IMG/VR virus record: IMGVR_UViG_3300033388_007730
Span: 124,001 to 188,000 of that record
DNA length: 64,000 nucleotides
Strand: one strand, 5' to 3'
A program made the position numbers and the translations under genes. The notes under the pieces are model-generated. The model was not told the DNA's origin, ran no database searches, and saw nothing but the letters and a program-made list of their open reading frames with translations. This document shows, in pieces, positions 1-64,000 of this stretch; positions within the stretch are counted from its first letter, which is position 1; every line of letters begins with the position of its first letter.

Positions 1-498
1 AAAGTAGATTTAACAAAAGTCTATTACCAATATAGACCTGGTGTCGATTATGATAGAATTCTTACTAACTCTCCTCACTTTGAATTAGCTCAACATTACT
101 ATAATAAGGGATTGAAATGGTTGAATGCAAATTTTAAAAATACAAAATATTTTATATTTCAAAAAGATATACTAAAAATCACTCCCTACGTTCCTGTGAA
201 GAAAATGAGGTTGTTTGACTCTTTAAAAAAGGGTTATTTAGGGAAGGGATATGAGAATGACCGTATAGTTATTTTAAATGATCCATTTATTTGTACTAGA
301 TATGCATTAAATTTGTCACTGCCTTCTCCAGAGGTTTTTATGGGGCATCATAGAGCAGGAGCGATGTTGGCTTTAGGGCAAAAAAATGTAGAAGTTATTG
401 TGGCTGTTGACGATATGATAGGAACTAAGAATTGTTATGGTAGACTCCATGATATTTATAGTTTGGAGAAGGTTCAAAAAATGAGGTATAACTTATGA
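1..498 (+). CDS. Hypothetical protein, 5'-truncated by the window edge
   Basis: Frame 1 is open from base 1 (KVDLTKVYYQYRPG...) into the listed 112..498 ORF; contains MGHHRAGAM, loosely ParB/Srx-like. Confidence 0.6.
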   Translation, partial: KVDLTKVYYQYRPGVDYDRILTNSPHFELAQHYYNKGLKWLNANFKNTKYFIFQKDILKITPYVPVKKMRLFDSLKKGYLGKGYENDRIVILNDPFICTRYALNLSLPSPEVFMGHHRAGAMLALGQKNVEVIVAVDDMIGTKNCYGRLHDIYSLEKVQKMRYNL

Positions 499-2504
499 GT
501 ATTTTGATTACAGGTATAACTGGTTTTGTGGGAAGTCATTTAGCAGATTATCTTTTGGAAGAAACAGATGATATCATTCATGGGTTAACAAGGTGGAGAT
601 CTCCAAAAGAAAATGTTTTACATCTTATAGATGATAGCTCAATTCGTTTTGAATATGGTGATTTAACAGATTTTTCATCTTTGTATAATATTATTAATCT
701 TAATCGTCCAAGAGTTATATTTCATTTAGCTGCTCAATCTTATGTTCCATATAGTTTTGATGTACCTGCTGCTACTCTTGATTCTAATGTAATAGGAACT
801 TGTAATCTACTGGAGGCTGTTAAACTTTTGAAAGACGATAAAGGATATGATCCTATTGTTCATATTTGTTCTTCATCAGAAGTTTACGGACAGGTTTCAG
901 AAGACAATGTTCCAATCACAGAAGATTGTCCTTTTGCTCCAGCTTCTCCATATGCTGTTTCTAAAGTTGGTGAGGATATGCTGGGGTTTCAGTATTGGAC
1001 ATCTTGGGGTGTAAAAACTATTAGGACTAGAATGTTTACTCATAGTGTAAGTAAATGGACTCCTGTTATTTTAAAAGATACATTAAGTGAATTGATAGAT
1101 ATAAAATATATTTCAGAAATAAGAAAAAAAGGGAAAGAAGGGGGATATTTTTCGGGAAAAATGTTAGAAGATAATACTCAAATATGGGATATGAATAGAT
1201 CTAATTTAGAAGTGTGGAATGATGAAAAATGGACAAAAATAAAACATATATCTTGTCACTCTATTAATAATTGTAAAATGTTAGAAATAATTAGTAGAGG
1301 TGGGGTTATCTGTGCTACAGATAATCATTCTATAATTGATGAAAAATCAAAAGAAATTTTAGCTTCAGATTTAAAATGTGGAGATAAGATAAAGATAACT
1401 TCTTTGCCAAATATTGAGATTACTGATATTTCAGAAGATTTAGCTTGGTTATATGGATTTTTTGTAGCTGAAGGGACAGTAACTGGAGGAAGATTAAAAA
1501 TTTCTAACAAGAATATTGATTTGTTAGAAAAATCAAAAGTTATTTTTTTAAAATATTTGGCAATTGATGGAACTATAGACCAGTATAAAGACATTTATAC
1601 TTTAAGATTAAGAAAGCCATTTTGTATAGCAAAAAGATTTTATGAAGATTGTTATGCAACTGACAAAAATAAAAAAATACCAAAAATTATTTTAAACGCT
1701 AATAAAAAATCAAAAATTTCTTTTTTACGGGGGTATAATTGTGGAGATGGAAACTTAAAAAATAATGTAAAAAGTGATTTTTATAGATTTAAAACAAAAT
1801 CTCCTATTTTAGCTATGGGATTATGTTATTTTATAGAAAGTGTTTTAAATGTAAAGTATAAAATTAATGTTGAACATAGAGATGATAAAAGATATTTTGA
1901 AATAAGATGTTTGTCTCAAAAAAATACAAAAAATGGGGAGTGGTTAAAAAAAGATAACAATGTTATTTTAAAAATAATGAAAATGGAATATGAAGATGAA
2001 GTTTGGGATTTTGAAACAGAGAATCATTGGTTCCATGCAGGTATAGGTGGGAATATTGTACATAATACTGGTCCACGTAGAGGTGATGTTTTTGTAGTAT
2101 CTGCTTTTGCTAAACAAATAGCAAAGATTGAAGTTGGATTGCAGAAGAACATTATTCACGTTGGCAATCTTGATAGTGTAAGAACTTTCGCTGATGTTAG
2201 AGATACTGTAAAAGCTTATTGGAAATTAGTTAATGAATGTGAGCCAGGAGAAGTTTATAATATTGGTGGAAATGTTACTATGACTATTGGAGAGATGCTA
2301 GATAAACTTATTGAAAAATCTACTATGGATAATATAGAGGTATTTGTAGATCCTAATCTGTTAAGACCCTCAGATGTCACACTTCAAATACCATGTACAG
2401 ATAAGTTTAAAAAAGCGACAGGTTGGGAACCAGGGATAGATTTTGACACAACATTAGAAGATACTCTTAATTTTTGGAGAGAATATTGGAGAAAAAATGG
2501 ATAA
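495..2504 (+). CDS. gmd: GDP-mannose 4,6-dehydratase-family SDR containing an intein
   Basis: TGITGFVGSHL Rossmann motif, HLAAQSYV, SSSEVYG, SPYAVSK (YxxxK), GNLDSVRTFADVRD, LLRPSDV. Confidence 0.9.
   Translation: MSILITGITGFVGSHLADYLLEETDDIIHGLTRWRSPKENVLHLIDDSSIRFEYGDLTDFSSLYNIINLNRPRVIFHLAAQSYVPYSFDVPAATLDSNVIGTCNLLEAVKLLKDDKGYDPIVHICSSSEVYGQVSEDNVPITEDCPFAPASPYAVSKVGEDMLGFQYWTSWGVKTIRTRMFTHSVSKWTPVILKDTLSELIDIKYISEIRKKGKEGGYFSGKMLEDNTQIWDMNRSNLEVWNDEKWTKIKHISCHSINNCKMLEIISRGGVICATDNHSIIDEKSKEILASDLKCGDKIKITSLPNIEITDISEDLAWLYGFFVAEGTVTGGRLKISNKNIDLLEKSKVIFLKYLAIDGTIDQYKDIYTLRLRKPFCIAKRFYEDCYATDKNKKIPKIILNANKKSKISFLRGYNCGDGNLKNNVKSDFYRFKTKSPILAMGLCYFIESVLNVKYKINVEHRDDKRYFEIRCLSQKNTKNGEWLKKDNNVILKIMKMEYEDEVWDFETENHWFHAGIGGNIVHNTGPRRGDVFVVSAFAKQIAKIEVGLQKNIIHVGNLDSVRTFADVRDTVKAYWKLVNECEPGEVYNIGGNVTMTIGEMLDKLIEKSTMDNIEVFVDPNLLRPSDVTLQIPCTDKFKKATGWEPGIDFDTTLEDTLNFWREYWRKNG
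1044..2066 (+). mobile_element. Intein (341 aa) with LAGLIDADG endonuclease in gmd
   Basis: Junctions MFTH|SVSKWTPV and NIVHN|TGPRRG; block B ATDNHS; LAWLYGFFVAEG and FLRGYNCGDG; removal restores RMFTHTGPRRG. Confidence 0.92.
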
Positions 2505-22237: not shown

Positions 22238-22951
22238 ATGGAAGATACTATTATTATAGGAATGTCTGGTAAGAAACAATCTGGTAAAACTCTTTCTTGC
22301 GAAGATATTCAGAGAAAATATGGTCTATCACAATCTGCCAATTATCCTGTTACAACTATTTCTGCTACAGTAGCTCTATATAGTTTTGCTGATATGCTTA
22401 AACAAAAAGTATGTATGGATACTATGGGATTAACATATGAGCAATGTAATGGAACTAATGAACAAAAGAGCACTCCTACCAAATATAAATGGGAAAATTT
22501 ACCACGACAGATAAGATATGATAATAAATTGGGATCTAAATATGCATCTAATGGAGAAGTGTATCAACACATCTTACCAGAAGGATTTATGACTGCTAGA
22601 GAGATTTTACAGATAGTTGGGACAGACATATTTAGAAAGTATTTTGATGATGATATTTGGGTGAATGCTACTTTCAGAAAAATAGAGAAAGAGAAACCTA
22701 AAGTAGCAATTATTACAGATGCCAGGTTTCCAGGTGAGATCGACGCAATAATGAATAATGGTGGTTGTGTAATTCGTCTGTTAAGAGATGTCTGCGAAAG
22801 TGATTTTCATGAAAGTGAAACAGCATTAGATGATTATGATTTTACAAAGTGGGGAAATAGAGTTTGTATTATTGATAATCAACATATGAGTATAGAAGAA
22901 AAAAATGTTGTTGTATTTAAGTATCTAGAGGGAATAATCAAATGTCAATAA
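22238..22951 (+). CDS. Deoxynucleoside monophosphate kinase (phage type)
   Basis: SGKKQSGKT, SFADMLK, TAREILQIVGTD, IITDARF, HESE. Confidence 0.85.
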   Translation: MEDTIIIGMSGKKQSGKTLSCEDIQRKYGLSQSANYPVTTISATVALYSFADMLKQKVCMDTMGLTYEQCNGTNEQKSTPTKYKWENLPRQIRYDNKLGSKYASNGEVYQHILPEGFMTAREILQIVGTDIFRKYFDDDIWVNATFRKIEKEKPKVAIITDARFPGEIDAIMNNGGCVIRLLRDVCESDFHESETALDDYDFTKWGNRVCIIDNQHMSIEEKNVVVFKYLEGIIKCQ

Positions 22952-25647
22952 ATGATTCATTAGCTGTAAAATATAGACCAGGTAAGTTGGATGATGTTAT
23001 CGGTCAACCAGTCGTTGTTAAAGCATTTAAAAATGCATTCAAATCTGAGACACTTCATCATGCTTATATTTTAGCGGGAAAATATGGTTGTGGGAAATGT
23101 GTAACAGGAGATACTCTTGTTTTAACCGATAAGGGATTGAAGCGTATCGATGATATTGTGCCGAAACAAACGGGTATATCTTCAATTGATGTTAAAATTG
23201 TAGATGAACAGGGAATGGGAAGAACTTTTTTTGGATATTACGAAGAAAATGTAGATACAAAAAGAGTTACAAATAATTTAGGAATAGAGATACAAGGGAC
23301 ATTAGAGCATCCTTTAAGAGTTTTTAATACTAATACTTGTAATATTGAGTGGAGGAATATTGGGGAGATTAAAAATGGAGATATCTTACCTATTTACAGA
23401 AATGAGTATTGTATAAAAAATAAAAAGACAGAGTTATTATCTAAAAGTAATATTTTGTTAGAACTTTATATGATAGACAAAACTAGAAATTTAAAAGATA
23501 AAGTTGTCTGTCCAATTTGTGAAAAAGAGTTTTTGCAGCTAAACACACATTTAAAAACACATGATATATCTCTAAGTAAATTCCGCAAAAAGTATGGAGA
23601 AGATTATCCTATTCATGGAAAGCAGTTTGCCATAAATAATATTAAGAAATCTATAAAATCTGTTACATTGCCAACTCACGTTAATGATGATTTCGCAAGA
23701 TTTATAGGATATTTATTATCAGAGGGTAACATTTATAATAATTCTATTATTTTTACCAATTCTGATAAAATAGTTTTAGACGATTACGAGAGAATTGTTT
23801 CGCGTTTATTCGGAGTTAAAATTGAAAAGAGCAAAGATAGTCGTAAAGAAAATTTGTATAACTATCGTATCCATTCGGCATTGTTAGTATTTTATCTGAA
23901 TAGAATAGGAGGCATTAATCTTGCATTAAAAGAGAAGTATATTCCTAAACAATTATTTAGCTGGGACCATAAATACATTGTTGAATTTTTAAAAGCTTTG
24001 TTTGAGGGGGATGGAGGGATCAACGGTAAAAGAGTATCTTATTATACAATAAGCAAAAGATTATCAAAAGAGATTCAGCAGCTATTGTTAAGTTTTGGGA
24101 TAGTGTCTTATTTAAGAAAAGAAACAAAAAAATATAATAACTGTGTGAGGAAGTTGGGGCATGTTGCTTATTCGGTTAATATTAGTGGTTTAGATTTAAA
24201 GAAATATTATGAAGTAATTAATTTTATTTCAAATATTAAAAAGAATAGTTTGTCATTAATAGCGAATAAAAATGAAACTAATAATGATACAATACCTGGA
24301 ATCGCAAAATTATCTCATAGTATTATTGATACTTTGGGCATTTCAAAAGCAGGTAAAATACAGGTGGGAGACAAATGGATAATCGCCCCGAAAAAGCCTA
24401 GTAATTTTTCTGTTATTGCTAAAAAAAATGGTAATATATCTTATAGTAAATTAAGAGAAATTATTTCATATTTAGAGAGTCTCAAAGATATTGTCTCTCA
24501 TAAGTATAGTGATAAAAAAACTTTTTATGAGTTTATAAGCATTATAGATATATGCAATGAATTGTATGATAAGAAATATTATTTTTCGAGAGTAACTTTT
24601 GTTGAAGGTGGGCTTAATACAAGTGTTTATGATATATGTAAAGATGGAGGAGACAAATCTTTTATAGCTAATGGATACATTAGCCACAATACAACAGTTG
24701 CCAGAATAATAGCTGCTATGGAAAATTGTGAGAAGAATGGAAAAGACCCTTGCGGTGAATGCAAAAATTGCAGAGATATATTGAGTGGTAATTCTATAGA
24801 GGTAATTGAACTTGATGCTGCTAGTCATGGTGGTGTTGATGATATAAGAGCAATACATAAAGATCTCTACCAAATGCCTATCTCTTGTAAAGTGAAATAT
24901 GTTATCATTGATGAGGCTCATTCATTAACTAAACAAAGTGCTGAAGCAGCATTAAAGATGATTGAAGAGCCTCCTGAGTTTGTGAGATTTGTACTATGTA
25001 CAACAGAACCACAATCATTTAAACCAACTATTCATAGCAGGTGTATAACTTGGAAATTCAATAGTGTCAGTTGGATGGAGATGATACCGCTATTAGAAAC
25101 TATTTGTTCAGAAGAGGGTATCTCTTTTGATCGTGAATCTTTATCTATAATTACGAAAGCTTCAAAGGGTTCTGTCAGGAATTCATTACAGAATTTACAG
25201 ACAGTTATGAATTACACTGGAACTAAGAAACTCTCTCCAGAAGAATGTAGGGAAGCATTAGGAGTAGTCAATTCTAAGCTGTATTCTGATTTGATTGATG
25301 GGATAATTGAAGTAAAGATAATGAATTGTTATAAAGTAATTGAAGAGATTTTGAAAGATGGAAAAGATATTGGTTTGATTATAGATGGTGTATATGAATA
25401 TTTGAATAATATTCTTGTGGTAAGAGCCTGCAAGAATGATTTATCACATTTCAATTTCAGTGATGCAGAGATTAAAAAATACATTAGTCAAGCAGCAGGG
25501 ATGGAAGGTGATATGGTTCTTAGAACAATGAATTTGATGAATAATTTAGCTTTTGGTGTTGAATATGGACTTAACCCTCAAGTGTTACTCAATAAATTTG
25601 TTACTGAAGCTATGCTTACTAATAAGAGGTTCATGAAAAAGAGATAA
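22942..25647 (+). CDS. dnaX: DNA polymerase III clamp-loader gamma/tau subunit containing an intein
   Basis: KYRP, IGQ, HAYILAG..GCGK|TT, CGECKNC, ELDAAS, IIDEAH, LKMIEEPP, TIHSRC. Confidence 0.93.
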   Translation: MSINDSLAVKYRPGKLDDVIGQPVVVKAFKNAFKSETLHHAYILAGKYGCGKCVTGDTLVLTDKGLKRIDDIVPKQTGISSIDVKIVDEQGMGRTFFGYYEENVDTKRVTNNLGIEIQGTLEHPLRVFNTNTCNIEWRNIGEIKNGDILPIYRNEYCIKNKKTELLSKSNILLELYMIDKTRNLKDKVVCPICEKEFLQLNTHLKTHDISLSKFRKKYGEDYPIHGKQFAINNIKKSIKSVTLPTHVNDDFARFIGYLLSEGNIYNNSIIFTNSDKIVLDDYERIVSRLFGVKIEKSKDSRKENLYNYRIHSALLVFYLNRIGGINLALKEKYIPKQLFSWDHKYIVEFLKALFEGDGGINGKRVSYYTISKRLSKEIQQLLLSFGIVSYLRKETKKYNNCVRKLGHVAYSVNISGLDLKKYYEVINFISNIKKNSLSLIANKNETNNDTIPGIAKLSHSIIDTLGISKAGKIQVGDKWIIAPKKPSNFSVIAKKNGNISYSKLREIISYLESLKDIVSHKYSDKKTFYEFISIIDICNELYDKKYYFSRVTFVEGGLNTSVYDICKDGGDKSFIANGYISHNTTVARIIAAMENCEKNGKDPCGECKNCRDILSGNSIEVIELDAASHGGVDDIRAIHKDLYQMPISCKVKYVIIDEAHSLTKQSAEAALKMIEEPPEFVRFVLCTTEPQSFKPTIHSRCITWKFNSVSWMEMIPLLETICSEEGISFDRESLSIITKASKGSVRNSLQNLQTVMNYTGTKKLSPEECREALGVVNSKLYSDLIDGIIEVKIMNCYKVIEEILKDGKDIGLIIDGVYEYLNNILVVRACKNDLSHFNFSDAEIKKYISQAAGMEGDMVLRTMNLMNNLAFGVEYGLNPQVLLNKFVTEAMLTNKRFMKKR
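23098..24690 (+). mobile_element. Intein (531 aa) in the DnaX Walker A motif, with LAGLIDADG and C2H2 zinc finger
   Basis: GCGK|CVTGDTLV ... FIANGYISHN|TTVAR; GTLEHP; FIGYLLSEG and FLKALFEGDG. Confidence 0.95.
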
Positions 25648-57195: not shown

Positions 57196-59568
57196 ATGGA
57201 AGATATAAATATCAAATCATTATTACAAGGTGGAATTCGTAAAGATCCAGAAGATGATAGAGATTTTATTTTTACAACACCACATATTCCTGATCATACT
57301 GTCTTGGGAAGTGCTGATTCTATTCCATTAAAAATAGATCATTCTAATAAGATGGGTTCGGTTAAGTTTCAAGGTGCGTTAGGATGCCATGATATTAGAA
57401 CAGAAATACTTACAGAAAAAGGTTGGAAACTATTTAAAGATTTGGATAAAGAAGAAAAAGTAGCTACCGTTAATCCTAATACCCATGAAATTGAATATCA
57501 AGAGCCAATTAATTATTTAGAATATGATTATGAAGGAGATATGTATTATTTTCACCATAAAAGTGGATTAGATGCTATGGTTACTCCTAATCATAAGATG
57601 TATGTCAAGAAATGGGATAATAAAAATATGACATTAAAAGAAGAATTTGAATTCATTGAAGCACAAAATATGGGTTGGTATTCTGGATTGTTGACAAAAA
57701 TTGATTGGGATGGGATCTCTCCCAAAACAATGAAAATGCCAGATGTTGAGATAGGACAAAGAAATGGAAGCAAAAAACAATCTATAAGAATAGGTAAAGA
57801 AATTGATACTACTAATTTCATTACATTTTTGGGATTATATTTAGCAGAGGGCTGTTGTTATCGTCCTGAGGGTAGTGGATCTTACAGAATTGAGATCGCC
57901 GCTAGTGACAATAATGATAGGAAAAATGAAGTTATTGAAATTATTGATGATTTGCCGTATAAATATACTATTTATCATGATAGGATAACAATATGGAATA
58001 AATCTTTATATACATTTCTTAAGCCTTTTGGGAATGTTTATACTAAGTCAGTACCAAGATTTGTTATGGATTTGAATAAAAAGGATATCGCTGCATTTAT
58101 GTATGGTTATTATTTAGGAGATGGATCTTTTCATGATAATGGGGCAAGGACAGGGTATTCGGTATCTGAACATTTAATTGATGATCTTCAAGAACTATCT
58201 TTGAAAATAGGGGTATATAGTAGGAAAAAAAGTAGATCACCTAGAATTGCATATATTAAAGGTAGAAAAATTTTTGGTAAAGAAAGTTATGAACTTCATG
58301 AAAGACAAATAGATACGAAGTTGTCGATAGATAGAAATAAATATTCATCCAAAGTTCCATATAATAATAAAGTATATTGTGTAGAAGTCCCTAATCACAT
58401 ACTTATTACTAGAAGGGGTGGTTGTATTCTAATTTCTGGCAATTCGTGCGTAGCGTTTGCAGCTTGTGCTTTAAAAGAGTGGCAAGAAACAATAGAACAT
58501 GAAAAGGAAGTTTTGGCAGGGAAAAAAGATCATAGAGAAGGTAAAGAATATAATTTGTCTGAACAGTGGATTTATTGGAATTGTAAAAAAATAGATCCAT
58601 GGCCTAATTCTGAAGGAACAAATCTGAGATCAGCTATGAGAGTATTAAATAAGATTGGAGTTCCTACCGAACAAGCTTGGGGTTACACTGATGATAAGGT
58701 GAACATTGGTGAACCTGAAAGCTGGGCATATATGATAGCAAGGTGGAATTTAATAGGGTCTTATTGGAGAATATCAGGATTAGATCAAATTAAAAAAGCA
58801 TTGATCGAGAGTCCTATTATTATTGGGATGGCTTGTTTTAGAGAAATGTATGGTAATTTAGAACATGGTTTAATACCTTATCCTGCTAATCCTGGAGAAG
58901 TAATGTCTCATCATGCTGTTTGTGTTGTTGGTTATGATGAAGAGAAAAAACTCTTAAAATTTAAAAATAGTTGGTCTAAGTTCTGGGGAGATGTTGGTTA
59001 TGGATATATACCTTATGATTATGTAAGAGATTTTGTATGGGATGCGTGGATTGCTAGAGATATTAGTGTAACTCATGAAATGCTTGAAGGTACTAGATTA
59101 TTGGTAGGTGCAGATGTACCAACAGTAATAGAGATAGCTGAGACACCACTTATACAAAAAGATACAGAAGAGAATTTTTCTTTTGTAGGATTTAAGTATC
59201 CTTCTCTTTTAGATACTTTTTCTATTATTAAAGATATTTTTGGAGTTCCAGAAATAGAGATATTTAGAGCTTCTAAAAAGGTGGGAGTTAAATTAGAAGA
59301 TTCTTCATCTATTAACTTATTCTGTAAAAAATATTTTGCTGAGTTTAGAAAAGAATCTGTAAAGAAATATGGATTTGAAGTCGATGTTATTAAAGTGGAT
59401 GATGAATATCCAATTATTGGTATTTGTTTGTGTGAAAAAGAAATTAGTGATAAATTTGATGAAAATCAGATAAAGATAGAAGATGTAATGAAAAAAGTGG
59501 TTGGCATGAGAGATATATTGGCTCTTGGCAAAGATATAATAATTTACAATGGTGTGAGAAAATATTAA
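57196..59568 (+). CDS. Papain-family (C1A) cysteine protease containing an intein
   Basis: Spliced motif QGALGSCVAFA, LSEQWIY, HAVCVVGYD, KNSWSKFWGDVGYG. Confidence 0.9.
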   Translation: MEDINIKSLLQGGIRKDPEDDRDFIFTTPHIPDHTVLGSADSIPLKIDHSNKMGSVKFQGALGCHDIRTEILTEKGWKLFKDLDKEEKVATVNPNTHEIEYQEPINYLEYDYEGDMYYFHHKSGLDAMVTPNHKMYVKKWDNKNMTLKEEFEFIEAQNMGWYSGLLTKIDWDGISPKTMKMPDVEIGQRNGSKKQSIRIGKEIDTTNFITFLGLYLAEGCCYRPEGSGSYRIEIAASDNNDRKNEVIEIIDDLPYKYTIYHDRITIWNKSLYTFLKPFGNVYTKSVPRFVMDLNKKDIAAFMYGYYLGDGSFHDNGARTGYSVSEHLIDDLQELSLKIGVYSRKKSRSPRIAYIKGRKIFGKESYELHERQIDTKLSIDRNKYSSKVPYNNKVYCVEVPNHILITRRGGCILISGNSCVAFAACALKEWQETIEHEKEVLAGKKDHREGKEYNLSEQWIYWNCKKIDPWPNSEGTNLRSAMRVLNKIGVPTEQAWGYTDDKVNIGEPESWAYMIARWNLIGSYWRISGLDQIKKALIESPIIIGMACFREMYGNLEHGLIPYPANPGEVMSHHAVCVVGYDEEKKLLKFKNSWSKFWGDVGYGYIPYDYVRDFVWDAWIARDISVTHEMLEGTRLLVGADVPTVIEIAETPLIQKDTEENFSFVGFKYPSLLDTFSIIKDIFGVPEIEIFRASKKVGVKLEDSSSINLFCKKYFAEFRKESVKKYGFEVDVIKVDDEYPIIGICLCEKEISDKFDENQIKIEDVMKKVVGMRDILALGKDIIIYNGVRKY
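57385..58443 (+). mobile_element. Intein (353 aa) with LAGLIDADG endonuclease at the protease active site
   Basis: QGALG|CHDIRTEILT ... VYCVEVPNH...ISGN|SCVAF; VTPNHKM; FLGLYLAEG and YYLGDG. Confidence 0.93.
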
Positions 59569-61082: not shown

Positions 61083-61700
61083 ATGAAAGATGGAATAAAA
61101 AATGAAGAAGTTCTTTCAGAAGAACAACAAAAACTCATATCTAAAAATATGGGACTTTTAGATGCTTTTTACAAGACTGAGATAGGAAAAGGGTATATCC
61201 CTGATCAAAAAAAAGATGATTTTTTCAGTAATCTTCAACAGAGATTTTGTAATGCTGCTCTTAAATATAATGAAGATGCTGGGTTTAAGTTTAGTACTTT
61301 TGCTTATGGTAGTTTTATTTTTTGTGCAGCAGAAATGAAAAAAAAGCTTTTCAGAGACAGAAAAGTTTTTACTGGTAATGATAAGAAATTTGTTTCATAT
61401 GGAAAAAAATCTGTTTGGAATTCTATAAATGGATGGGATGTTGATTCTGTTATCAATTATGAAAAGGTAGTTAATCTTGTAAATAAAGTTCCTTTATCTG
61501 AAAAAGAAAGAACAGTAATTAATTTTTATTATTTTGAGGGTCTTACTCTTTTAGAAACAGGAAAAAAATTGGGACTCTCCAGACAAAGAATAAAACAAAT
61601 AACATTAGAAGCTATTTATAAAATTAAGAGATTTGCTGATAGAAGAGATTATAGAATAGGAGATTTTGTTAAGTATGGTGAAGGGTTTGTAAATGGCTAG
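61083..61700 (+). CDS. Alternative sigma-70 factor (SigF/FliA-like, regions 2 and 4)
   Basis: YNEDAGFKFSTFAY, LSEKERTVI..YYFEGLTLLETGKKLGLSRQRIKQI. Confidence 0.85.
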   Translation: MKDGIKNEEVLSEEQQKLISKNMGLLDAFYKTEIGKGYIPDQKKDDFFSNLQQRFCNAALKYNEDAGFKFSTFAYGSFIFCAAEMKKKLFRDRKVFTGNDKKFVSYGKKSVWNSINGWDVDSVINYEKVVNLVNKVPLSEKERTVINFYYFEGLTLLETGKKLGLSRQRIKQITLEAIYKIKRFADRRDYRIGDFVKYGEGFVNG

Positions 61701-62298
61701 ACCTTATGGAGGACACTATTTAACAGAAGAGCAGAAGAAATTAGCAGGAGATAATCTCCCTCTTGTCTGGTGGTTCATAAGTAAGTATGCATTGACAAAA
61801 GGAGTTATTCAAGTTCATGAAATAGATGAATGTTCTGGTTATTTGATTTGGCATCTGTGTATGTCTGCTGAAGCTTATGATCCTGATAGAGGCGTTAAAT
61901 TTAGTAGCTATGCTGTGAAAGGAATGTGGAGCGGATTACATATTTATTTAAATCTTAGAAATAAGCGTATTAATAGATTTATATCAACTGACTGGACTAT
62001 GCAGGGCAATGACGGAGCCATGTCTAATGAACCAGAATATAAGTCTAAAGCAGAGAGGACCATTAAGTGGAAAGATATTAAATCTTTATTTGATATCATA
62101 ACCATGAGTCCATTAGAAGAGCAAATTGTTTTCTTCACTTATGAGAAAAAATATTCTGCTAAACGGGTAGGAGACATTGTAGGTTTAACAGGAGAACGTA
62201 TCAGACAGCTTAAAGTAATAATAATTGATAAAATAAAAATTGCTGTTAAGGAAAATAATGTTTCGATAGAAGATTTTATTATGGATGATAAGGAATAG
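61693..62298 (+). CDS. Alternative sigma-70 factor (SigF/FliA-like), paralog of 61083
   Basis: LTEEQKKLAGDNLPLV, YDPDRGVKFSSYA, VGDIVGLTGERIRQL. Confidence 0.85.
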   Translation: MARPYGGHYLTEEQKKLAGDNLPLVWWFISKYALTKGVIQVHEIDECSGYLIWHLCMSAEAYDPDRGVKFSSYAVKGMWSGLHIYLNLRNKRINRFISTDWTMQGNDGAMSNEPEYKSKAERTIKWKDIKSLFDIITMSPLEEQIVFFTYEKKYSAKRVGDIVGLTGERIRQLKVIIIDKIKIAVKENNVSIEDFIMDDKE

Positions 62299-62299
62299 T

Positions 62300-63031
62300 A
62301 TGGTTAAAGGAAGTCCATTAATACATAAAGGTGTTAAAACAAAAATTGATACTATAGGAGAATTGATATATTCTTATAGGATAGCAAAGGGATTAACTCA
62401 GGTAGATTTAGGAAAAGCTATAGGAACATATATAAGAGTATATAAATTTGAAGAGTTTAGTCCAATGATACTTAAATATGAAAAAGGGTATGCCTTGCCA
62501 GGTTGTCACAATATTTATATGTTATCAGAAGTTCTTGGCATAGAAAAAGAACCTTTTTTTAATATGGTTCTTAAAGAACATTATAATAGATTTATCGAAA
62601 AACATCATGAGAAATTTTTTCAAGTTATTAGGATGATGGAAAAGGGAAAAGAGCTATCATCTATTGATACACTATGTAGATATGTTTTCTGCCATGAAGG
62701 AAAATTGAAACATAATTTTTCTAAATCTTCTAAGATATTAAAAAATGCTTTTTGGAAAAAAAAGATTACTGATAAGATTACTTATAAGTCAATGGCTATT
62801 GAATTGAATAGTCGTGATGGGACGCGATATTATGATTACCGCGATCTTTGTAATATAATGCATGGCAGAAGATTACTTAGTTTAAGAGTCTTATTTGAAA
62901 TATGCGATTATTTAGAAATAGAATCATTTAAATTACATAAAACAATAGTAGAAGAAAGAGCATTTGCTCATGCGGTAAATATGATGGAACAATGGGAAAT
63001 TTGTAAACAAGAAAGAAAAAATAATGGATAA
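62300..63031 (+). CDS. Tandem XRE-type HTH protein
   Basis: YRIAKGLTQVDLGKAIG...YEKG..LP; second unit TYKSMAIEL...ICDYLEI. Confidence 0.65.
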   Translation: MVKGSPLIHKGVKTKIDTIGELIYSYRIAKGLTQVDLGKAIGTYIRVYKFEEFSPMILKYEKGYALPGCHNIYMLSEVLGIEKEPFFNMVLKEHYNRFIEKHHEKFFQVIRMMEKGKELSSIDTLCRYVFCHEGKLKHNFSKSSKILKNAFWKKKITDKITYKSMAIELNSRDGTRYYDYRDLCNIMHGRRLLSLRVLFEICDYLEIESFKLHKTIVEERAFAHAVNMMEQWEICKQERKNNG

Positions 63032-63602
63032 AAAAATTACAATAATAAAAAAATTAACAGATTTCAAGTGGATTAATTTATTTAATGTGAAGTATACCAA
63101 CGCTAAAGGTAATTTAGTAGATTGGGTCTTTGCTTCTCGAAAAAAAGATCCACTGGATTATGATGGTGTTGATGCTGTAGTTATTGTGCCATTAATAGAT
63201 ACTCCTGAAGGCAGAAAAGTAGTTATTATTAAGGAGTATAGAGTTGCGATAAGTGGTTATGAATATGGGTTTCCAGCAGGATTGGTGGAGGATGGATTCA
63301 GTGTTGAAGAAACAGCAAGAAAAGAGTTGAGAGAGGAAACTGGATTTGTGATAAGAGATCTTATTAGTAGAACTAATAAGATATATACTTCTCCTGGTCT
63401 TAGCGATGAATCTTGTGTTATAGTTTTTGCAGAAGTAGTAGGAAATTTTAGTACAGATTATCAGGAAGCTACTGAAGATATAGAATCTATGTTAATGGGA
63501 GTTGAAGAAGTAAGAGATCTCCTTGATGATCCTGATAAGAAGATAGGATCTAAAGCTTGGGGAGTTCTTTACTATTATTCTCAAATAGGAGAGATTAAAT
63601 AA
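63024..63602 (+). CDS. NUDIX hydrolase (ADP-ribose pyrophosphatase-like)
   Basis: FPAGLVEDG...ETARKELREETG, SPGLSDE. Confidence 0.9.
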   Translation: MDKKITIIKKLTDFKWINLFNVKYTNAKGNLVDWVFASRKKDPLDYDGVDAVVIVPLIDTPEGRKVVIIKEYRVAISGYEYGFPAGLVEDGFSVEETARKELREETGFVIRDLISRTNKIYTSPGLSDESCVIVFAEVVGNFSTDYQEATEDIESMLMGVEEVRDLLDDPDKKIGSKAWGVLYYYSQIGEIK

Positions 63603-63609
63603 TGCCTCA

Positions 63610-64000
63610 TTATAATAAGGTTATATTATATTTTCTATCCAGATGAATTGTGCTATTTTGATAGAGCCAATTCGTGAGTTTGTGGCATTGTTTATTGCCA
63701 CCAATAGTTAATCCTTTAGCTTTGCCTTTATTTTGAAGTTTTTTATATTTTATATTTAGTTCTTTGAAAAATAAATACTGTAGAGAATTAAGAAATTTTT
63801 CTGTTCCGACAATAGTGATTTGAAGGTTTCTGCGATTTCCATTTTTTCGGTAGCATATACAGCCATCTCCATCGATATAACCTCTGATAAAGTGATGTTG
63901 AAGATTATAATCTATATTGGGGAATTTTAGGGTGAGGCTTTTTCTTGGAGTGCAACCTAATTTTATGAGATCGTTGCATAGTTTATTAGAATAATATCTT
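63610..64000 (-). CDS. LAGLIDADG homing endonuclease, 5'-truncated by the window edge
   Basis: Minus-strand frame LGCTPRKSLTLKFP...HFIRGYIDGDGC...LDRKYNITLL*; not in the ORF track. Confidence 0.85.
   Translation of the reverse strand, partial: RYYSNKLCNDLIKLGCTPRKSLTLKFPNIDYNLQHHFIRGYIDGDGCICYRKNGNRRNLQITIVGTEKFLNSLQYLFFKELNIKYKKLQNKGKAKGLTIGGNKQCHKLTNWLYQNSTIHLDRKYNITLL

What the first reader, a model, noticed from the sequence alone, without database searches (positions are those of the whole stretch)
57196..59568. Intein inserted next to the catalytic cysteine of a papain-like protease
Seen: a 353-aa LAGLIDADG intein splits QGALG|SCVAFA. The +1 nucleophile is Ser and the catalytic Cys is at +2, separated from the oxyanion-hole Gln until splicing. 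The intein ends Gly-Asn rather than His-Asn. Known: most inteins lie in nucleotide-binding replication proteins, so a C1A peptidase is an atypical host. Inference: the protease cannot work before splicing, so the intein could act as a conditional or timing switch, for example in virion maturation. It may also simply be a homing parasite at a conserved site.
Basis: partly seen in the sequence, partly recalled or inferred. Interest (0 to 1): 0.72.

Follow-up and report, generated by a model that had tools for sequence, protein, structure and literature searches.

The report
Mobile intein splitting a phage papain-like protease
A huge-phage gene for a papain-type cysteine protease is interrupted, one residue before its catalytic cysteine, by a self-splicing and probably mobile intein. 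Related phage genes carry inteins beside the other two catalytic residues as well, which makes this an undescribed but mechanistically ordinary case of selfish elements lodging in active sites.

Summary
ORF 57196-59568 (+) encodes a 790-aa precursor. A 353-aa LAGLIDADG intein (Cys64 to Asn416) sits between Gly63 and Ser417 of the motif QGALG|SCVAFA. Removing it restores the papain-family active-site motif, as found uninterrupted in intein-free and syntenic relatives.

The intein folds like PI-SceI and the VMA inteins. It belongs to a phage intein lineage also found in terminase, ribonucleotide reductase and NAMPT genes. Cys1, a block-F Cys and a penultimate Gly are shared traits of that lineage.

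In this viral C1 peptidase subfamily I found three intein sites, each 1-4 residues from a catalytic-triad residue:
- a, before Ser-Cys
- b, after His-Ala-Val
- c, after Asn-Ser-Trp-Ser/Gly

Four observations point to a homing parasite:
- Intein alleles are scattered over the extein tree.
- Inteins are more alike than their host genes (74% against 51%).
- The intein, including its endonuclease, is under purifying selection.
- The genome holds at least six more intein-like regions.

Nothing supports a timing switch or a role in virion maturation. The gene lies among nucleotide-metabolism and sigma-factor genes.

Verdict: a new host and new sites for a known kind of element, of moderate interest.

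The parts
57196..59568 (+). Precursor gene: C1 (papain-family) cysteine peptidase interrupted by an intein. The precursor is 790 aa and the predicted spliced product 437 aa.
57196..57384 (+). N-extein, aa 1-63. It ends with the motif FQGALG and holds the oxyanion-hole Gln59 (57370-57372). There is no propeptide (no Inhibitor_I29 hit).
57385..58443 (+). Intein, aa 64-416 (353 aa): Cys1 to Gly-Asn. It is class-1-like and of LAGLIDADG type.
57385..57699 (+). N-terminal splicing region (blocks A and B): Cys64, and Thr130-Pro-Asn-His133 (57583-57594).
   Evidence: Invariant columns C1, D3, T6, E7, T67, P68 and H70 in alignment A2. TIGR01445 scores above its cut-off.
57700..58329 (+). LAGLIDADG homing-endonuclease domain. 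Motif 1 lies at 57826-57852 (Glu218) and motif 2 at 58099-58125 (Asp309).
   Evidence: Pfam LAGLIDADG_3; PI-PkoII match; I-DmoI and PI-SceI fold matches; dN/dS 0.07 between P0007 and P0013
58330..58443 (+). C-terminal splicing region (blocks F and G). It holds VYCVEVPNH with the invariant block-F Cys395 (58372-58398), Arg-Arg, Gly415 and Asn416.
58444..59115 (+). C-extein, the C1 peptidase core (aa 417-640): Ser417 (+1), catalytic Cys418 (58447-58449), catalytic His573 (58912-58914) and Asn591 (58966-58968). The sites used by inteins b (after Val575) and c (after Ser594) in relatives are empty here.
59116..59565 (+). C-terminal extension of about 150 aa of unknown function. It is shared only with P0002 and P0003 and is an alpha/beta domain with no significant fold match.

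Best explanation
This is a selfish, splicing-competent class-1 intein with a LAGLIDADG homing endonuclease. It has homed into the most conserved codons of a huge-phage papain-family (C1) peptidase gene, between Gly63 and Ser417, one residue before the catalytic Cys. Shown: the insertion is precise, and intein-free orthologues read through it. It has the intein sequence blocks and the intein fold. It belongs to a phage intein lineage that also lives in terminase, RNR and NAMPT genes. It is patchily distributed, and it is more conserved than its host gene. Inferred mechanism: Cys64 makes the N-terminal thioester. Ser417 (the conserved Ser of the G-S-C-W motif) attacks it. Asn416 cyclises without a penultimate His, possibly helped by block-F His400 or the invariant Arg-Arg. 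An O-to-N shift then restores QGALGSCVAFA and gives a 437-aa peptidase with Gln59, Cys418, His573 and Asn591 in register. The excised endonuclease would cut intein-free alleles in co-infecting phages and copy the intein in. The site is favoured because it cannot drift or be deleted imprecisely without killing the enzyme, and because it offers a Ser nucleophile. The same logic explains the two other intein sites in this gene family, beside the catalytic His and Asn. The precursor is probably inactive, but as a by-product rather than a designed switch.
For: Junctions and empty sites. The syntenic L006, from a 547,943-bp contig, reads QGALG|SCVGF without an intein. Triad assignment. Intein identity: and the fold. 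Lineage traits (Cys1, block-F Cys, Gly-Asn) are shared with inteins of Gordonia phage GMA6 terminase, Lak-A1 and Staphylococcus phage NAMPT. These residues are invariant in A2, mini-inteins included. A penultimate Gly is compatible with full splicing in a phage intein (PMC5050341). Mobility: on the extein tree the site-a label needs 5 changes for its 5 rows, and P0001's sister P0002 is intein-free. Site-a inteins form one clade at 100/99 support. Intein identity between P0001 and P0007/P0013 is 73-74%, against 51-53% for the exteins. dN/dS is 0.05-0.14, with the endonuclease domain at 0.07. Mini-inteins at the same site (P0005, P0014) fit the homing cycle. The genome is intein-rich.
Against: No splicing, endonuclease or protease activity was measured. 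No reads or runs could be found to show intein-plus and intein-minus variants in one population. dS is near saturation, so the dN/dS values are rough. Block-F His400 is not invariant in the lineage (Ser in P0012, Gly in P0014), so what assists Asn cyclisation is unknown. The invariant block-F Cys is unusual for class 1, and its role is unexplained. A selfish origin does not exclude a secondary regulatory effect.
Confidence: 0.8

Rival explanations
1. Conditional-splicing switch. The intein keeps the protease off until a redox, metal, temperature or timing cue lets it splice, for example to time proteolysis late in infection or during virion maturation.
For: The insertion separates Gln59 from Cys418 and sits at the start of the active-site helix, so the precursor should be inactive (inference). 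Cysteines cluster at the splice site (Cys64, Cys395, Cys411 and the catalytic Cys418), so a disulfide trap is chemically conceivable. Kelley et al. argue that non-His penultimate residues tune splicing rate in phages (PMC5050341). No canonical prohead protease was found in the 219-kb record, but the record is only 44% complete.
Against: The closest relatives do without the intein. The same intein lineage sits in unrelated genes. An endonuclease is maintained, which a pure regulator would not need. The neighbours are nucleotide-metabolism and transcription genes, not structural ones. A penultimate Gly gave fast, complete splicing in the one phage intein tested.
Confidence: 0.1
2. Decayed or non-splicing insertion. 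The gene is a pseudogene, or the HINT domain only cleaves, so no active peptidase is made.
For: The penultimate His is missing. Block F has Cys in place of the usual Asp. Pfam Intein_splicing and Hint score below their gathering cut-offs.
Against: The frame is open for 790 aa. All nucleophiles and TxxH are present and invariant across nine relatives. dN/dS is well below 1. The extein catalytic residues are intact. The same end motifs occur in inteins of essential genes of cultured phages, terminase and RNR, which must splice.
Confidence: 0.05
3. Assembly chimera or other artefact joining an intein to a peptidase gene.
For: The source is a metagenome-assembled contig.
Against: The same architecture at the same codon occurs in six independent protein clusters from different data sets (ENA, Logan, NCBI, JGI). 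The junctions are in frame and exact. The G+C content of the intein (0.30) matches that of the exteins (0.32).
Confidence: 0.01

Closest known systems
Phage class-1 LAGLIDADG inteins with a penultimate Gly: Gordonia phage GMA6 terminase large subunit, Staphylococcus Twort-like phage NAMPT and RNR inteins, a Lak-A1 megaphage intein, and the mycobacteriophage Bethlehem gp51 RDF intein studied by Kelley et al. 2016
   Same: Homologous over the whole length at 26-32% identity. The block A start is the same (C-[HYF]-x-x-x-T-E-[ILV]-L-T), and so are TxxH, the block-F V-Y/H-C-V motif and the ..G-N|S/T end. All carry a LAGLIDADG endonuclease and all reside in phages.
   Different: The host protein is a papain-family peptidase rather than an NTP- or nucleotide-binding enzyme. 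The insertion lies next to a catalytic nucleophile.
Inteins in other proteases: Chlamydomonas eugametos chloroplast ClpP, archaeal LonB, and Lon of Nucleocytoviricota and Anaeramoeba
   Same: An intein interrupts a protease, so the protease needs splicing to mature. The ClpP intein also lacks a canonical penultimate His. These are cited in PMC5050341 ref 52, PMC4760082 and PMC10710043.
   Different: Those are serine proteases, and the Lon inteins lie in an ATPase-containing protein. No cysteine peptidase of family C1 was found in the papers searched.
Multi-site intein hot spots in one protein (Prp8 with 7 sites; DnaB, MCM, PolB, RNR)
   Same: One conserved gene family has several independent insertion points clustered at functional motifs, with different intein lineages at different sites (here LAGLIDADG at sites a and c, HNH-type at site b).
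   Different: Here the three sites map one-to-one onto the three catalytic-triad residues of a small hydrolase. [quoted passage not shown]
Xylellain (PDB 3ois) and cathepsins K, L and S: the nearest solved C1 peptidases
   Same: The Q...G-S-C, H-A-V and N-S-W motifs align. PF00112 scores above its cut-off.
   Different: Only about 25-30% identical. There is no I29 propeptide, and position 22 is Leu rather than the disulfide Cys. In P0001-P0003 an extra C-terminal domain of about 150 aa is present.

Membership tests
Intein (protein-splicing element) | In-frame insertion whose removal restores a contiguous, conserved host sequence | tested here: met
   Intein-free relatives, including the syntenic L006, read QG.LG-SCV.F straight through.
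Intein (protein-splicing element) | Position-1 nucleophile (Cys/Ser), block B TxxH, C-terminal Asn and +1 Ser/Thr/Cys | tested here: met
   Cys64, Thr130..His133, Asn416 and Ser417. All are invariant in alignment A2.
Intein (protein-splicing element) | Penultimate His (block G:6); common but not obligatory | tested here: not met
   Gly415. Gly is conserved across the lineage. Known phage inteins with Gly splice (PMC5050341).
Intein (protein-splicing element) | HINT fold | tested here: met
   The model (pLDDT 84.7, pTM 0.84) matches TliVMA, PhoVMA, PI-SceI, PI-PkoII and PI-PfuI at probability 1.00.
Intein (protein-splicing element) | Protein splicing actually occurs | not testable with these tools
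   This needs expression and detection of ligated exteins.
LAGLIDADG homing endonuclease (double-motif) | Two LAGLIDADG motifs, each with a catalytic acidic residue, and the alpha-beta-beta-alpha-beta-beta-alpha fold | tested here: met
   Motifs at aa 211-219 (Glu218) and 302-310 (Asp309). Pfam PF14528 scores 28.6 bits against a cut-off of 22.5. The fold matches I-DmoI. DNA cleavage was not tested.
Class 3 inteins (WCT triplet) | Trp at B:12, Cys at F:4, Thr at G:5, and usually no position-1 nucleophile | tested here: not met
   B:12 is Met135, G:5 is Ser414 and Cys1 is present. Only the F:4 Cys395 fits. Block numbering follows PMC5050341.
Peptidase family C1 (papain family) | Pfam PF00112 above the gathering score, with Gln, Cys, His and Asn in the conserved motifs | tested here: met
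   44.8 bits against 20.7 for the precursor and 65.2 bits for the intein-free sister P0002. Gln59, Cys418, His573 and Asn591 align to the cathepsin and xylellain motifs.
Peptidase subfamily C1A as usually met (secreted zymogens) | N-terminal I29-type propeptide or signal sequence | tested here: not met
   No Inhibitor_I29 hit at E<=1. Only about 45 residues precede the mature-domain motif. No signal-peptide predictor was available.
Conditional (regulated) protein-splicing inteins | Splicing that depends on redox state, temperature, salt, a metal or a substrate | not testable with these tools
   Only circumstantial: cysteines lie near the junction. Distribution and mobility argue for a parasite.
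Phage prohead (maturation) protease | Location in the head-morphogenesis module next to the portal, scaffold and capsid genes | tested here: not met
   The neighbours are an AAA_28 protein, a dCMP deaminase, two sigma-70-like proteins, an HTH protein and a NUDIX protein. In relatives the neighbours are DUF5661, DUF5662, Acb1 and a lysozyme.

The most novel reading that the evidence does not exclude
The inteins that sit beside each catalytic-triad residue of this huge-phage C1 peptidase family might be more than parasites. They could have been co-opted as post-translational locks, for example a disulfide trap involving Cys64, Cys395 and the catalytic Cys418. Such a lock would keep a potentially self-damaging cytoplasmic protease off until a defined redox state or stage of infection.
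Probability: 0.08. Interest if true: 0.75.

Novelty: new member of a known kind. Interest (0 to 1): 0.45.

Why it matters
Inteins are known mostly from ATP- and nucleotide-binding replication, repair and packaging proteins. Here a small cofactor-free hydrolase family of huge phages has been invaded at three separate points, each within 1-4 residues of one member of the Cys-His-Asn triad. Two intein types are involved (LAGLIDADG and HNH), and mini-intein derivatives and one double-intein allele also occur.

This is a clean natural example for the view that inteins persist where sequence cannot change. It adds a new host family and three new insertion sites to intein catalogues, and all of these proteins are currently labelled 'hypothetical'.

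It also offers a compact test system. The protease read-out depends directly on splicing, with a Ser+1/Cys+2 junction and a lineage that lacks the penultimate His. Finally, it marks this phage group as unusually intein-rich, with candidate split inteins.

Tried and rejected
- **Sequencing runs.** None was listed for the locus. Presence/absence polymorphism in the source population could not be examined.
- **Third word-index protein search.** I used tblastn against GenBank phages instead.
- **C-terminal 150-aa domain.** It has no Pfam, NCBIfam or PADLOC hit and no stand-alone homologues. Atlas structure hits to SPOR domains are weak (TM 0.39-0.44). The AlphaFold model (pLDDT 74) has no significant PDB match (best E 0.056). 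Its function is left open, and the SPOR/cell-wall idea is not supported.
- **Class 3 mechanism.** I considered it because of the invariant block-F Cys and rejected it: there is no Trp at B:12, no Thr at G:5, and Cys1 is invariant.
- **Jump from site a to site c within the gene.** The two lineages are each monophyletic, but their mutual relation to the terminase, Lak and NAMPT inteins is unresolved. No such claim is made.
- **Canonical prohead proteases (S77, S78).** Not found in the 219-kb record. This is uninformative because the record is 44% complete and the S77 control found nothing anywhere.
- **Endolysin role.** It was suggested by one distant (26% identity) annotated phage homologue and is not supported.
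- **More distant C1 peptidases.** Among the best 150 representatives they show no inteins.
- **Literature.** Searches found no paper on an intein in a papain-family peptidase. InBase and InterPro architectures could not be queried.
Full report
**Observation.** The window is bases 124001-188000 of a 219,188-bp IMG/VR virus record that CheckV rates 44% complete. It has about 31% G+C and almost all genes lie on one strand. Its genes include a clamp loader, topoisomerase I, a tRNA nucleotidyltransferase and sigma factors. Its relatives sit on contigs of up to 548 kb. It is therefore a huge phage.

ORF 57196-59568 (+) is open for 790 aa. Residues 64-416 (DNA 57385-58443) begin with Cys-His-Asp and end with Gly-Asn. 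They are flanked by FQGALG and SCVAFA.

**The host protein.**
- Pfam places the C-extein in Peptidase_C1 (E 2e-11, 44.8 bits against a cut-off of 20.7).
- The best solved relative is xylellain, PDB 3ois (E 3.5e-17).
- The natural intein-free relative P0003 aligns to cathepsins K, L and S and to xylellain across all three active-site motifs.
- In the window protein the catalytic residues are therefore Gln59, Cys418, His573 and Asn591.
- There is no I29 propeptide. The residue that forms a disulfide in secreted papains is Leu here. This suggests a cytoplasmic enzyme.
- A C-terminal extension of about 150 aa is shared only with P0002 and P0003. No function could be assigned to it.

**The insertion is an intein.**
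- LAGLIDADG_3 scores above its cut-off, and so does NCBIfam intein_Nterm.
- The PDB sequence search finds PI-PkoII and an NrdHF intein.
- PHROG hits cover intein-bearing RNR, ThyX and PhoH families.
- tblastn aligns residues 1-353 end to end with inteins of cultured and metagenomic phages: Lak-A1 (32% identity, E 7e-36), Gordonia phage GMA6 terminase (E 8e-23), T5-like and Twort-like phage RNR, and Staphylococcus phage NAMPT.
- An AlphaFold model built on nine relatives (pLDDT 84.7, pTM 0.84) matches whole intein-endonucleases: TliVMA, PhoVMA, PI-SceI, PI-PkoII and PI-PfuI at E 3e-19 to 1e-11. Its middle part matches I-DmoI.
- Both LAGLIDADG motifs keep their acidic residue.

**The Gly-Asn end and other odd residues are lineage traits.** In alignment A2 (four full-length site-a inteins, three site-c inteins and two mini-inteins) the invariant positions are Cys1, Asp3, Thr6, Glu7, Thr67-Pro68-x-His70, the block-F Cys332, Arg343-Arg344, Gly352 and Asn353. 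The terminase, Lak-A1 and NAMPT inteins also end in Gly-Asn followed by Ser or Thr, and they also have V-Y/H-C-V in block F. Terminase and RNR are essential in cultured phages, so this architecture must splice.

Kelley et al. report that phage class-1 inteins often replace the penultimate His by Gly, Lys or Ser. They also report that a Gly-bearing intein splices completely and is slowed by a Gly-to-His change (PMC5050341). The intein is not class 3: B:12 is Met, G:5 is Ser and Cys1 is invariant. The role of the invariant block-F Cys remains unexplained.

**Wider picture: three sites, one per triad residue.** I ran a word-index search and an exhaustive HMMER search of 1.84 billion representatives (35 representatives at E<1e-30). 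Together they show a compact viral subfamily of C1 peptidases. Within it I found inteins at three positions:

| Site | Position | Alleles | Intein type |
|---|---|---|---|
| a | Gly\|Ser-Cys | P0001, P0007, P0012, P0013 (full length); P0005, P0014 (151- and 158-aa mini-inteins) | LAGLIDADG |
| b | His-Ala-Val\|Cys | P0006, P0008-P0011, P0013, P0016, P0023, P0030 | canonical His-Asn end, HNH-like endonuclease |
| c | Asn-Ser-Trp-Ser/Gly\|Cys/Ser | P0004, P0015, P0042 | LAGLIDADG, ends Cys-Gly-Asn |

P0013 carries two inteins (a and b). Each site is 1-4 residues from one member of the catalytic triad. More distant C1 peptidases among the best 150 hits have none. All of these proteins are unnamed or called 'hypothetical'.

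**Evidence for mobility.**
- Of 36 close loci in IMG/VR, 35 are empty at all three sites and one has a site-b intein.
- L006 (a 547,943-bp contig) and L003 share the window's gene order around the peptidase, and both read through the site without an intein.
- On a maximum-likelihood tree of 65 extein cores, the site-a label needs 5 changes for its 5 rows, site b needs 6 for 8, and site c needs 3 for 3. The sister of P0001 is the intein-free P0002.
- The site-a inteins themselves form one clade (100/99), as do the site-c inteins.
- P0001's intein is 73-74% identical to those of P0007 and P0013, while the exteins are 51-53% identical. P0015 and P0042 show 68% against 44%.
- Nei-Gojobori dN/dS is 0.05 between P0007 and P0013 (endonuclease domain 0.07) and 0.08-0.11 against the window copy. 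dS is near saturation, so these values are rough.
- Mini-inteins at the same codon fit the later stages of the homing cycle.
- The genome carries at least six further intein-like regions: in a clamp loader, a GDP-mannose dehydratase/epimerase, a UvrD helicase, a PolIII alpha split over two ORFs, a fractured RNA ligase and an AAA ATPase. It also has free-standing LAGLIDADG genes.

**Mechanism (inferred).** This would be standard class-1 splicing.
1. Cys64 forms the thioester.
2. Ser417 carries out the trans-esterification.
3. Asn416 cyclises.
4. An O-to-N shift yields the 437-aa peptidase.

The site offers an immutable target for the endonuclease and a ready-made Ser nucleophile. The conserved Cys after His-Ala-Val plays the same part at site b. 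At site c the +1 residue varies among intein-free alleles but is Cys or Ser in the intein-bearing ones. The precursor is probably inactive, because the insertion separates Gln59 from Cys418 at the start of the active-site helix. This was not tested.

**The regulatory reading.** Nothing found here favours a timing switch. The nearest relatives lack the intein, and the element keeps its own endonuclease. The flanking genes are an AAA_28 protein, a dCMP deaminase, two sigma-70-like proteins, an HTH protein and a NUDIX hydrolase. In relatives they are DUF5661, DUF5662, Acb1 and a lysozyme. None belongs to a head-morphogenesis module. Canonical prohead proteases were not found, but the record is incomplete. 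A redox trap involving the junction cysteines remains chemically possible, and I rate it at about 0.1.

[quoted passage not shown] The proteases known to host inteins are ClpP and Lon. Four full-text searches found no report of an intein in a papain-family peptidase. InBase and InterPro could not be queried.

The element is therefore a new member of a known kind, with a new host family and three new sites. It is a neat illustration of active-site targeting rather than a new mechanism.

Noticed in passing
window 22942-25647 (+): A DnaX-like clamp-loader gene (901 aa) carries a large LAGLIDADG intein, roughly aa 53-583, ending His-Asn|Thr. A ROS/MUCR-like zinc-finger hit lies inside the intein.
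   Followed up: partly
window 495-2504 (+): A GDP-mannose 4,6-dehydratase / NAD-dependent epimerase (669 aa) is interrupted by a LAGLIDADG intein, roughly aa 185-524, ending His-Asn|Thr. This is a second non-replicative host in the same window.
   Followed up: partly
L072 1175-2221 and 2253-3650 (G000 68674-69720 and 69752-71149): PolIII alpha is encoded as two adjacent ORFs. The second begins with an intein C-terminal segment of about 48 aa that ends ..VVHN|CHAAGVVV. This is a candidate naturally split intein, or an intein with an out-of-frame part.
   Followed up: partly
L071 1486-2283 and 2603-3157 (G000 195485-196282 and 196602-197156): One ORF has an OB fold plus a Hint N-terminal half. 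After a gap containing stop codons comes an RNA-ligase ORF. This looks like a fractured gene with a split or decayed intein.
   Followed up: partly
L070 1470-4460 (G000 78969-81959): A UvrD/Rep helicase (997 aa) has an intein at about aa 263-609. Pfam Intein_splicing scores above its cut-off.
   Followed up: partly
L073 2026-3039 (G000 204025-205038): An AAA ATPase ORF whose first 130 aa or so match the intein splicing domain. It may be another split or N-terminally truncated intein arrangement.
   Followed up: no
window 63610-63999 (-), running off the window; also L074 1131-2036: Free-standing LAGLIDADG endonuclease ORFs. One is on the minus strand of an otherwise plus-strand genome. The other is fused to an AP2 DNA-binding domain.
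   Followed up: no
window 61083-62298 (+): Two tandem sigma-70-like genes (region 4 hits) are followed by an HTH protein (62285-63031) and a NUDIX hydrolase (63024-63602).
   Followed up: no
window 57385-57464: The first 80 nt of the intein are 81.5% identical at the DNA level to the start of the NAMPT intein of Staphylococcus Twort-like phages (Stab23 and others). The proteins as a whole are only 26% identical.
   Followed up: partly
L076 6001-8868 (protein P0013): A relative's peptidase carries two inteins at once (site a LAGLIDADG and site b HNH-type). Its neighbours include Acb1-like 2',5'-phosphodiesterase, phage lysozyme, ClpP and EF-Ts genes.
   Followed up: partly
window 59116-59565: The C-terminal domain of the peptidase (about 150 aa) is found only in P0001-P0003. 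The predicted alpha/beta fold has no significant match, and the resemblance to SPOR domains is weak.
   Followed up: yes
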